Of a stretch of DNA of 64,000 nucleotides, positions 43,461-46,400 are shown piece by piece; the stretch's first letter is position 1, and every line of letters starts with the position of its first letter. The notes beneath the pieces are model-generated. The model saw nothing but the letters and a program-made list of their open reading frames with translations. It did no database searches and was not told the origin of the DNA. The position numbers were made by a program, and so were the translations under genes. The stretch is from Stylophora pistillata (lineage: Eukaryota), in contig NW_019217818.1 in assembly GCF_002571385.2 (NCBI RefSeq), forward strand, positions 277,594 through 341,593, given 5' to 3'.

Positions 43461-46400
43461 TGCATACGGCTTTGCGTAAAGAAGGAAGTATGTTAGATAC
43501 AAATTGACTTCAGGCAGCTGAAGAGCTAGAAAACCTTAGTACATGGTGAAATTTTTAGCTCTTTGGGTGTAATATTCAAGGAGAAATAGTTCATCAAAAA
43601 CTGCAAAATTTCTGGGTGGCGAAAGCGCTAATGAGCTCATACATTCTATGTAAAATTTTGAGTTTTTAAACCCGTGTTGCACAAAAACTATTCAATGCAT
43701 CAGGCTCGTATTCATTGGCCGAGTTAATCGTACTTTGGCCTTTCGATATTCAGAACTGATTTATTTTTAGCTCCATCAGAAACTGAATTGCTTATGCTAA
43801 TGAGGCAAATATTGTAAACAAGGATTCCCCTATTGACAATGGCGTCTATTCTCACTGCCTAACTGTTAGACTAAGTATCAAAAGTTTCAGGAGGATTTGC
43901 GGCGCACTGATTATCTCGGGGAGCAAAAAGTCGCCAAATTGTAAAAAGCCTCTTCTATATCCAACGTTTTTACACTTTTTCCCATAAATCCTTTAATTAT
44001 TCTGTTTCCGACCAATATGTAAATAAAGTTGCCTTTTCAGATTTAATTTGCATCTAAAACTGTATATAAAATAGCCCCACTACAATCTCAGAGAAATGTC
44101 GGAAAGTTTAATAATACGTCACCCAAATAAATGGATAAGCTGTTGATTTCTAAAATAAGCATAACGCTCTAAACAAAGCCTCTGGTGGGGGTTTTAATTG
44201 TCCTCAAATGCTGCACATCTCAGACCAGTCCTTACAAGCACTTAGACTTACAGCCGCGGGGCCAAAGCGACGTGAATCAAACACATGGAACTGATAACAG
44301 TCGACAGTTTTTTTTGCAGTTTTTCATGGGAAATACTGAGGGAAATGATTTGAAAAGGTACAGAAATTATTCAGCTATCAATACTACACAACGAAATATC
44401 ACCACCATCAACATATTGAAAAAATTTGGAAGTTATCAGACAAGATTCGCTTCTAAAAGACCGAACAATATAGTTTACTCGAACAATCTACCCGCAGCTG
44501 GGGAGATGACTGAAAACCATTCTTGATAAATAGAACACTGGTAATTAAAAGACAGAAAAACTAGTAGATTTTTCCTGAATACGACGTCACCTGATCCTCG
44601 CCGCAATATAATTTACGCCTATATAATTTGTTTGGTTTCATGATTTTAAAAAATGCACATACAAATTTCATCAACCCTCGCGTTCGAAAACTAATCAAGA
44701 TTTCAAATTACGCAATATCTTGTTGGGCATAAACAGTGCGAAGCACTAAAGAGCCCCATGATTTTGATTAGTCGCTGTGTCAAGTCACTGAAAACATAGA
44801 TGCTAAACATTCCAAGATAAATCATCCGTGTCCAGGGTGTTTACAGCTCCGTCTCTTTAAGAATAAGTTTAGAGATCAACTCACATCTTTTCTGCGACGT
44901 CTAAACAAGCCAAAAACTCGTCCAACAGCTGTCACAACAGGATTCATTTGTACTGTGTGCTATGATGCTGAGGTTCGGTGATCAGTCACGTTTGTCAATA
45001 ACGAATAATTATCCCAAGAGATCCGTGCTAAATTGTTCAACCAGAACTGTTCCCGCACAATATTGCGAAGCGAGTGTTTACCGACGCAAAGCGATCAGCG
45101 GTTAAAAAAAGAACCAAAAAAAATATTCCTCGATGTTCAGACAACCGTTGAAGGAAATAGACAGCAAATGAACAAGTAGCTGATGGGCCTAGCATAACCT
45201 TCAAAGGATATCGTAACACAAATTTATGCATTCATTTCACACGTTCTAGAGACACCCTTAAGAACAATGACCGCCAAAAAAAACACCAGCTGCAGTTTCT
45301 AGTCTAATAACTAGGAATTATCTGGATCCTTCTCTTTCACGGAAAAATACTTAGCAACCACAAGCCTTTCCATGCACGTACGCTCTCTATGTCCCTTGCT
45401 TTTCGATTTTAGAGATATAAATATATAATTTTTTTTTATTTCACCCGATCAGCTGACGCGACAAATCACTTGAGACACTCCTCCCTAGTACTTTCTGCTA
45501 TAGGACACACAATTACATATTTACCTGGAAAGGAAGCTTACCTATACCCAGCTCCACAAATAGGCATCAAGTGTGACATTTCCAGCGTGACTATCACGTC
45601 CACCCCTTTCGGGCGCCATTGCACTCCACTATGAGGTTATATTGCTGCTGCACTTACCTTAGCGCGGTTGTTCTCGCTTGGGAAGCAAGGGTACATGAAG
45701 GTGATAATGTGAAGTGTGAGACGTCGAGCATAAAACGTGAATAGCGTGAACCGTAATACGTGAATCATGATGCATTAACCGTGACGCGTAAAACGTGAAG
45801 AGCGAGGCGCAAGGAACTTTTCTTTCCGGACTTACCTTGACGTCAAAACGATTTCTAAGCTCCAGCAGCTGAGTTTGGAGTTGATCCCACTGGTTGTTAA
45901 CCCCGGTCACCTTGTGGACGACATTACTTGTATCCTGATTCGTATCCTCCAGGTATCTAATCACTTCCTGCCCAGATTCATTAGTGTTGGCCACCTGGTA
46001 CTTCAAACTGGATATTTCGTGATTTAAGGCCTGTTAAAACAAACAAAAAATAAATGTAAACAATTTCAAAAATATCTACTAAAGTAGTAACACGACGACA
46101 AAGTGCACGGAGTTTTCCGACGGTAGAAAATGGGGAAAAAGAACCAAGTCAATGACGAGTAGATTGCCAATTAAAAACCAAAGCCCCCGTCACTTAATCA
46201 GTTCTTAAACAAGTAACAGCAATAGCTACGAAACTGTTTACAGTTCAACTACGTTTCCGCTGGAATTAATGGTTTGCCACGTTTTTTTCACTTTCTTAAT
46301 GGAAATAGTTCTAAGACTAACCAAGTCGATCTTGCTCCTTCAAGCCCTTATTTTTTTGTCCATTTTTTGTACTGTTGTCTTTTTCATAATTTTTGAATTT

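What the first reader, a model, noticed from the sequence alone, without database searches (positions are those of the whole stretch)
45658..45835. Stop-codon microexon guarded by a dense Nova-type YCAY cluster
Seen: the 159-nt intron after exon 45836-46030 has a ~138-nt AG-free zone and 10 YCAY motifs in 104 nt, against about 1.6 expected. The first AG defines a 19-nt exon, CGAGAACAACCGCGCTAAG, with a perfect donor; it reads REQPR-stop. Retaining the intron reaches the same TAA, while the next AG would give a frame-keeping 15-nt NNRAK exon. Established: YCAY clusters just upstream of an exon are the Nova/Pasilla silencing signature. Inference: a switch that ends translation (short N-terminal protein or NMD) unless Nova represses the exon, so only Nova-positive cells make the giant full-length protein.
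Basis: partly seen in the sequence, partly recalled or inferred. Interest (0 to 1): 0.8.

Follow-up and report, generated by a model that had tools for sequence, protein, structure and literature searches.

The report
Conserved UCAY repeat array in coral intron
An intron of a giant coral cytoskeletal (spectraplakin) gene starts with 10-12 UCAY motifs that many stony corals have kept, probably a docking site for a Nova-type splicing protein; no RNA evidence shows that the 19-base "stop exon" behind it is ever used.

Summary
On the minus strand, the 195-nt exon (46030-45836) is followed by 159 nt with only four AGs and 10 YCAY motifs. Next comes CGAGAACAACCGCGCTAAG with an in-frame TAA, then GTAAGT.

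The YCAY cluster is real and conserved. All 10 orthologous loci of the clade that has it (7 distinct lineages; exon identity down to 69%) carry 10-12 sense-strand UCAY in the first 160 nt of this intron. The motifs sit mostly 7 nt apart, and the UCAC core is better kept than the 3-nt spacer. In the more distant of these lineages (L001, L003, L004, L016) the other introns no longer align. The genome encodes a clear Nova ortholog.

The stop microexon is not supported:
- RNA contigs from three studies join 45836 directly to 43280, and no contig contains the 19-nt exon.
- The closest relatives keep both splice sites but have no stop in the 19 nt.
- More distant corals keep the array but have lost the donor.
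- An equally perfect donor inside the giant exon is not used in the contigs.

The array is therefore tied to the 195-nt exon's 5' splice site, not to the microexon. My best reading is a conserved intronic platform for a splicing regulator, with Nova the likeliest reader. It lies at the hinge before a giant insert exon and an internal first exon. Its target and direction of action are untested.

The scan had noted neighbouring features of this window, but not this array.

The parts
45836..46030 (-). 195-nt spectrin-repeat exon (65 aa, phase 0 at both ends). Its 5' splice site (AAG|GTAAGT) is the anchor of the array.
   Evidence: Junctions 46450->46030 in 4 runs and 45836->43280 in 3 runs. Weak Pfam Spectrin match. 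Orthologous exon in 13 loci.
45695..45801 (-). UCAY array: 10 YCAY (8 TCAC, 2 TCAT) in a degenerate heptad repeat with consensus TTCACGC, starting 38 nt after the donor.
   Evidence: spacing of 7 nt in 42 of 71 intervals across 7 lineages. (core 0.77-0.86 against spacer 0.50-0.68). (10-12 copies in all 10 loci).
45658..45676 (-). 19-nt candidate exon CGAGAACAACCGCGCTAAG with an in-frame TAA, an AAG acceptor and a perfect donor. Most likely an unused or rarely used pseudo-exon.
   Evidence: Sequence. No junction contig. Splice sites kept only in L007/L014/L018 and roughly in L001; the stop is not kept.
45510..45600 (-). Conserved non-coding block C (..CGTGA.AGTCACGCTG..TTTGTGGAGC..GGTRAGC..AGGTRAAT..). 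It is older than the array and its function is unknown.
   Evidence: Alignment. Present in L049, L050 and L051, which lack the array; TTTGTGGAGC itself is intact only in L050. A 22-nt indel rules out coding. No Rfam hit and no stable fold.
44885..44947 (-). Conserved internal first exon (ATG..., MNPVVTAVGRVFGLFRRRRKD, then GTGAGT) inside the same intron.
   Evidence: Conservation starts at the ATG, and no conserved acceptor lies upstream.
43281..45835 (-). The 2555-nt intron that the contigs show spliced out as one piece.
   Evidence: The joint skips 2555 nt with GT..AG ends on the gene strand, in X2, X4 and X5. Acceptor ctttag|GATGAC.
41076..43280 (-). Giant 2205-nt (735-codon) insert exon joined directly to the 195-nt exon.
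   Evidence: The X2 contig of 14.8 kb is colinear through it, and X4 and X5 pieces cover it. Open frame.

Best explanation
The feature is a conserved array of 10-12 UCAY motifs, a degenerate heptad of UCAC plus three variable bases. It occupies roughly positions 20-160 of the intron after the 195-nt exon of a coral spectraplakin gene. Because all motifs lie on the transcribed strand and are kept in number and position across corals, I read it as an RNA-level docking platform for a sequence-specific splicing regulator. The coral Nova ortholog, whose KH domains recognise YCAY, is the likeliest reader. By position it should act on the 5' splice site at 45836 and on the choice of partner 3' site across the 2.5-kb intron that leads to the giant insert exon. 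The 19-nt stop exon is a lineage-restricted pseudo-exon at the end of the array. At most it is a secondary target in pocilloporid corals, not the reason the array exists.

Shown: the array, its conservation, its strand bias, the core-versus-spacer constraint, the Nova gene, and the default splice 45836->43280.

For: - Ten loci from 7 distinct lineages (exon DNA identity to the window 87% down to 69%) each hold 10-12 YCAY in the first 160 nt of the intron and 1-4 in the next 170 nt. No other 160-nt span in any locus reaches that count.
- In L003, L004 and L016 the introns otherwise do not align. Only this intron's start and the internal first exon do.
- Motifs are sense-only: 0-3 RTGR against 10-12 YCAY.
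- TCAC is the top 4-mer, with 59 copies. Core positions match the consensus at 0.77-0.86 and spacer positions at 0.50-0.68, whatever unit phase is chosen.
- The array starts 18-43 nt from the donor in every lineage, including those without the microexon donor.
- The region folds no better than shuffles (z = +0.93), as expected for a single-stranded protein site.
- A Nova ortholog is present: the 368-aa ORF on G000:C477 matches Nova-1 KH1/2 at 4e-45 and Nova-2 KH3 at 8e-20, far above PCBP or IGF2BP.
- The locus is single copy, not a transposon.
Against: - No RNA evidence shows any alternative event at this site. Contigs show only 45836->43280.
- Contigs in X4 and X5 break exactly at the exon end, and X1 carries 24 unplaced letters there. 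That hints at a second continuation but does not identify it.
- The array is a tandem heptamer. Heptamer microsatellites containing TCAY are ordinary in this genome (189 matches against 301 for the reversed control). Local unit duplications (TCACaca TCACagt repeated in L007) show ongoing slippage, so part of the conservation could be self-renewal.
- Three more distant lineages (L049, L050, L051) lack the array (3-5 YCAY), so it is not essential to the gene.
- Other proteins that bind CA-rich RNA, such as hnRNP L, or DNA-binding factors that read CACG, could be the readers instead.
Confidence: 0.5

Rival explanations
1. One reading: Nova bound to the array silences a 19-nt poison or stop exon. 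Cells without Nova include it and make a truncated protein or an NMD substrate.
For: - Both splice sites and the 19-nt length, which is not a multiple of 3, are kept in L007, L014 and L018. L001 keeps about 20 nt with a GTAAGA donor.
- The array ends 20-30 nt upstream of the acceptor, the silencing position in the Nova RNA map (established knowledge).
- A Nova gene is present.
- Contigs drop rare isoforms, so absence is weak evidence.
Against: - No inclusion junction appears in 4 runs, and 3 studies show direct skipping.
- The stop is not conserved even in the nearest relatives.
- The donor is lost in L016, L003 and L004, which keep the array.
- Window and L007 are 15/19 identical in the exon, no better than the 74% of the flanking intron.
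- The acceptor is AAG here.
- A perfect donor is left unused at 42873.
Confidence: 0.12
2. A self-perpetuating heptamer minisatellite with no function. It expanded once from the TCACGCT motif of block C in an ancestor of this coral clade and is kept alive by replication slippage.
For: - 7-nt periodicity.
- Recent-looking unit duplications inside species.
- Block C of array-less lineages already carries 2-3 TCACGCT-like units.
- Such microsatellites are common genome-wide.
Against: - Copy number stays within 10-12 in 7 lineages whose other intron sequence has mostly diverged beyond alignment, fully so in the more distant ones.
- The core is better kept than the spacer, whereas slippage would homogenise whole units.
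- No inverted or decayed remnants are seen.
Confidence: 0.16
3. A DNA-level regulatory element: an array of transcription-factor half-sites (CACG or GTGA type). Together with block C, it would serve the internal promoter about 750 nt downstream that drives the MNP... first exon.
For: - The internal first exon is conserved.
- Block C contains a near-palindrome, CGTGA.AGTCACG.
- CACG follows about half of the cores.
Against: - A strict single orientation over 10-12 units is atypical for enhancers.
- The G after TCAC is only 49% kept, while TCAC itself is kept.
- The array keeps a fixed distance from the splice donor rather than from the promoter.
Confidence: 0.12
4. An RNA element read by something other than Nova. 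Candidates are an hnRNP L-type CA-rich intronic enhancer next to the 5' splice site, or an array of branch-point-like UUCAC (yUnAy) motifs.
For: - CACA and ACAC are frequent in the array: 22 and 16 copies.
- UUCAC fits the loose metazoan branch-point consensus (established knowledge).
- CA-repeat enhancers directly downstream of a donor are known, for example in eNOS intron 13 (from memory).
Against: - The best-kept unit is UCAC, not CA alone.
- The branch-point reading needs a nearby acceptor, which distant lineages lack.
Confidence: 0.1

Closest known systems
Nova/Pasilla YCAY clusters of the Nova RNA map (vertebrate GlyRa2, GABRG2 and Nova1 exons; Drosophila pasilla targets)
   Same: A dense cluster of UCAY within 200 nt of a splice site, on the sense strand, unstructured and conserved between species. 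A bona fide Nova ortholog is in the same genome.
   Different: The cluster is a regular heptad repeat. It lies in a cnidarian, where I know of no described Nova target; the one search I ran on this (Nova, YCAY, Nematostella) gave one unrelated review. No alternative splicing event or binding has been shown here.
Intronic CA-repeat / CA-rich splicing enhancers bound by hnRNP L (e.g. eNOS intron 13; from memory)
   Same: A tandem short repeat directly downstream of a 5' splice site, and copy number matters in the known cases.
   Different: The conserved unit here is UCAC plus a 3-nt spacer, not (CA)n.
Poison (PTC) cassette exons coupled to NMD
   Same: A 19-nt insert with splice-site-like ends would give a stop or a frameshift.
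   Different: There is no transcript support, the stop is not conserved, and the exon is absent in lineages that keep the array.
Spectraplakin isoform hubs (MACF1/dystonin, Shot, VAB-10: internal promoters and giant optional exons; from memory)
   Same: The array lies in the intron that precedes a giant insert exon and holds a conserved internal first exon. The gene has spectrin repeats and a C-terminal GAR domain.
   Different: I know of no comparable motif array at such hubs.

Membership tests
Nova-type YCAY-cluster splicing element | Cluster of many YCAY within about 100 nt, well above background | tested here: met
   10 in 104 nt against 1.3 expected. Top of the 64-kb strand. Reached in 2/200 simulations.
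Nova-type YCAY-cluster splicing element | Lies within about 200 nt of a splice site, on the pre-mRNA strand | tested here: met
   Starts 18-43 nt after the donor of the 195-nt exon in all 7 lineages. Sense-only.
Nova-type YCAY-cluster splicing element | Cluster conserved between species | tested here: met
   10-12 YCAY in 10 loci of 7 lineages. Absent in 3 more distant lineages.
Nova-type YCAY-cluster splicing element | Nova protein present in the organism | tested here: met
   G000:C477 ORF with three KH domains. Best PDB hits are Nova-1 KH1/2 at 4e-45 and Nova-2 KH3 at 8e-20.
Nova-type YCAY-cluster splicing element | The neighbouring splice event is alternative and depends on Nova | tested here: inconclusive
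   Only contigs were available. One junction was seen (45836->43280). Contig breaks at 45835 and 24 unplaced letters in X1 remain unresolved.
Nova-type YCAY-cluster splicing element | Direct binding of Nova to the RNA (CLIP or gel shift) | not testable with these tools
   Needs an experiment.
Poison / stop-codon cassette microexon | Inclusion junctions in RNA | tested here: not met
   No joint to 45676 or from 45658 in 4 runs. A 202-nt low-depth contig (45522-45723) is colinear and unspliced. Contigs can miss rare forms.
Poison / stop-codon cassette microexon | Exon, splice sites and premature stop conserved | tested here: not met
   The stop is absent in L007, L014 and L018. The donor is absent in L016, L003 and L004.
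Neutral microsatellite | All unit positions decay or homogenise alike | tested here: not met
   Core TCAC 0.77-0.86 against spacer 0.50-0.68, independent of phase.

The most novel reading that the evidence does not exclude
The array is a genuine Nova (or Nova-like KH protein) switch in a non-bilaterian animal. It would sit at the hinge of a spectraplakin gene and decide how the N-terminal rod is joined to the giant insert exon. In pocilloporids it might also decide whether a frameshifting 19-nt exon is suppressed. That would give a concrete conserved cis-target for cnidarian Nova and would place position-dependent YCAY regulation before the cnidarian-bilaterian split.
Probability: 0.2. Interest if true: 0.6.

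Novelty: new member of a known kind. Interest (0 to 1): 0.4.

Why it matters
Nova-type regulation is well mapped in vertebrates and flies. Its targets in cnidarians are, to my knowledge, unknown.

This is a deeply conserved, strand-specific UCAY array next to a splice donor, in a genome with a clear Nova gene. It offers a defined, short and testable candidate target.

It also marks the intron where this giant cytoskeletal gene can be split into isoforms, through the giant insert exon and the internal first exon.

The finding also shows that the more eye-catching stop-microexon switch has no support. That saves effort on that model.

Tried and rejected
- **RNA structure.** I tested whether the array pairs with the GUGA-rich block C. 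The 326-nt region folds worse than shuffles (z = +0.93), so I rejected this.
- **Known RNA family or intronic snoRNA/miRNA.** Only a chance tmRNA fragment on the other strand appeared.
- **Tandem Repeats Finder.** It reported nothing. The repeat is too degenerate, and its periodicity showed only in motif spacing.
- **Transposon or multi-copy origin.** The locus is single copy in the genome.
- **Coding extension by intron read-through.** The ORFs in other species stay open only because of composition. P0008 and P0009 stop after 9 residues, and indels are not multiples of 3.
- **Block C as a coding exon.** Rejected because of the 22-nt indel and weak acceptors.
- **Conserved AG-exclusion zone.** Not conserved: L007 and L014 have AGs in the array.
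- **JGI metagenome contigs.** A scan for the exon end, to catch transcripts, found 0 matches.
- **Irimia et al. 2011 (PMC3069165).** The paper is not held. Statements about Nova outside vertebrates rest on a review (PMC12992808) and on my memory.
- I left that step out, so I could not look for proteins ending in ...FDVK-REQPR. I did not use the large HMMER search.

Full report
**1. What is there**

The window lies in a giant gene on the minus strand. Its exons give spectrin-repeat matches. A GAS2/GAR domain lies on the same strand 25 kb further on (G000:C35:251976-252095), and no KASH domain was found. The gene is therefore a spectraplakin. The sequencing runs that hold this DNA are labelled coral. 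Earlier notes of this scan call the genome Stylophora pistillata, a pocilloporid; I did not check that.

- Exon 46030-45836 is 195 nt.
- A 159-nt stretch follows, with AG only at positions 4, 13, 18 and 158.
- That stretch holds ten YCAY: 8 TCAC and 2 TCAT.
- The 19 nt CGAGAACAACCGCGCTAAG read REQPR-stop and are followed by GTAAGTG.
- Retaining the intron reaches the same TAA.
- The next AG gives a 15-nt NNRAK exon.

**2. Chance**

The sense strand carries 1.3 YCAY per 104-nt span, and this span is the densest on it. A first-order Markov model of the strand reaches 10 in 2 of 200 runs. Tandem Repeats Finder sees nothing. Motif spacing shows a degenerate heptad instead: across seven lineages, 42 of 71 intervals are 7 nt and 11 are 14 nt. 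Perfect heptamer microsatellites containing TCAY are ordinary in this genome, with 189 matches against 301 for the reversed control. The locus itself is single copy. On one genome alone the cluster would be a curiosity.

**3. RNA evidence**

Only assembled contigs were available, not raw reads. What they show:
- All four runs have the junction 46450->46030.
- Three runs from three studies (X2, X4, X5) have 45836->43280, which removes 2555 nt with GT..AG ends. In X2 this lies inside one 14.8-kb contig.
- No contig joins 45836 to 45676 or 45658 to anything.
- One low-depth 202-nt contig in X1 (45522-45723) is colinear with the genome across the 19 nt and both flanks, so it is unspliced.
- Similar low-depth contigs lie elsewhere in the intron. 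They fit pre-mRNA, DNA carry-over or internal priming at the A-run near 45430.

Two loose ends remain. The X4 and X5 contigs break exactly at the exon end, and the X1 contig carries 24 letters past 45835 that were not placed. Either may mean a second continuation, for example skipping of the insert exon. Contigs drop rare variants, so inclusion at a low level is not excluded.

**4. Other corals**

I searched with the open stretch made of the exon plus the intron read-through. This found ORFs called on genomic contigs of other corals, and I fetched 21 loci. Exon identity to the window:

| Loci | Exon identity |
|---|---|
| L007, L014, L018 | 87-88% |
| L001 | 82% |
| L003, L004, L010, L012, L016 | 69-73% |
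| L049, L050, L051 | 64-67% |

In all ten loci of the first three rows, which represent seven distinct lineages:
- The first 160 nt of the intron hold 10-12 YCAY and the next 170 nt hold 1-4.
- No other 160-nt span of any locus reaches that count.
- The motifs are on the sense strand only, with 0-3 RTGR.
- The array begins 18-43 nt after the donor.

In the distant lineages L003, L004 and L016, introns otherwise do not align with the window. Only this intron's start and a block at 44953-44860 do.

Unbiased counts put TCAC first among 4-mers, with 59 copies, and TTCAC first among 5-mers. I also segmented the arrays into heptads with all seven positions weighted equally. Whatever the unit phase, the match to consensus was 0.77-0.86 for T-C-A-C and 0.50-0.68 for the other three positions. 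Number and position are kept, the exact alignment is not, and the core is kept better than the spacer. That is the pattern expected of a selected motif cluster with turnover.

The three most distant lineages lack the array (3-5 YCAY) but keep block C, which already holds 2-3 TCACGCT-like units. The array therefore probably grew out of block C in the ancestor of one large coral clade.

**5. The microexon in other corals**

| Loci | State of the 19-nt exon |
|---|---|
| L007, L014, L018 | Good acceptor (TAG), 19 nt, perfect donor; text CGAAAACAACCGTGCCGAG has no stop |
| L001 | About 20 nt, GTAAGA donor |
| L010, L012 | Only a weak GTTA donor |
| L016, L003, L004 | No donor (TGAGAG, TTAAGAG) |

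The 19 nt are 15/19 identical between the window and L007. That is no better than the 74% of the surrounding intron. The AG-free zone is not kept either. On the gene strand the window holds six AGGTAAGT. One of them (42873) lies inside the giant exon, and the contigs run colinear through it. The array is thus older and more widespread than the pseudo-exon, and it is anchored to the upstream donor.

**6. A possible reader**

A KH-domain scan of the genome found an intronless 368-aa ORF with three KH domains on G000:C477. Its best solved relatives are Nova-1 KH1/2 (4e-45) and Nova-2 KH3 (8e-20), well above PCBP, IGF2BP and FUBP. Nova KH domains recognise YCAY, and their effect depends on position relative to the exon. 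That is established knowledge; a review held here notes that NOVA orthologues are splicing factors across metazoans with divergent expression (PMC12992808). The array region is not structured (z = +0.93) and matches no Rfam family, which fits a single-stranded protein site.

**7. Mechanism, with marks**

Shown:
- a conserved, sense-only UCAY heptad array next to the donor;
- a Nova gene in the genome;
- the default splice to the giant insert exon.

Inferred:
- The array works in the pre-mRNA.
- Nova binds it.
- By analogy with the RNA map, binding just downstream of a donor favours that donor and occludes nearby cryptic 3' sites, so the long intron is removed in one piece.

The intron is a hub. 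It also holds the conserved internal first exon 44947-44885 (MNPVVTAVGRVFGLFRRRRKD) and is followed by a 735-codon insert exon. That exon's ORFs are far longer in other corals, from at least 1306 up to 2366 residues. Which of these choices the array affects is open.

**8. Rivals**

- A self-renewing neutral minisatellite (0.16).
- A DNA-level enhancer for the internal promoter (0.12).
- Another RNA reader, such as hnRNP L or branch-point-like UUCAC (0.10).

The arguments are in the Rival explanations section.

**9. Verdict**

Interest is moderate.

Noticed in passing
window 45510-45600 (-): Conserved non-coding block C (CGTGA.AGTCACGCTG .. TTTGTGGAGC .. GGTRAGC .. AGGTRAAT). It is present in all 13 loci, including lineages that lack the UCAY array. 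It has a 22-nt indel, a near-palindrome and two donor-like motifs. Function unknown.
   Followed up: partly
window 44885-44947 (-): A conserved ATG-first exon (MNPVVTAVGRVFGLFRRRRKD + GTGAGT) inside the same intron.
   Followed up: partly
window 43417-43835: A high-copy repeat in the intron. RNA-run contigs pile up there at depths of hundreds to thousands, with loose ends on both sides.
   Followed up: no
window 41076-43280 (-) and L001, L003, L004, L049: The insert exon is 735 codons here. The ORFs called at the same place in other corals run 1306 to 2366 residues or more. BLAST shows internal repeats of about 150 nt, so this looks like a fast-evolving repeat exon.
   Followed up: no
window 42873 (-): A perfect AGGTAAGT donor lies inside the giant exon. 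The X2, X4 and X5 contigs run colinear through it.
   Followed up: partly
G000:C477:143670-144668 (L019:922-2025:-): A Nova ortholog encoded in a single intronless 368-aa open frame with three KH domains.
   Followed up: partly
window 38470-38637 (-) and 38930-39074 (+): The two other YCAY-dense spots of the window. The first is a simple ATY repeat (poly-Ile in translation), not a comparable array.
   Followed up: no
window about 45425-45445 (-): A GAAATAAAAAAAAATT run about 230 nt past the 19-nt exon. It could be a poly(A) signal or an internal-priming site, and it may explain the isolated X1 contig at 45522-45723.
   Followed up: no
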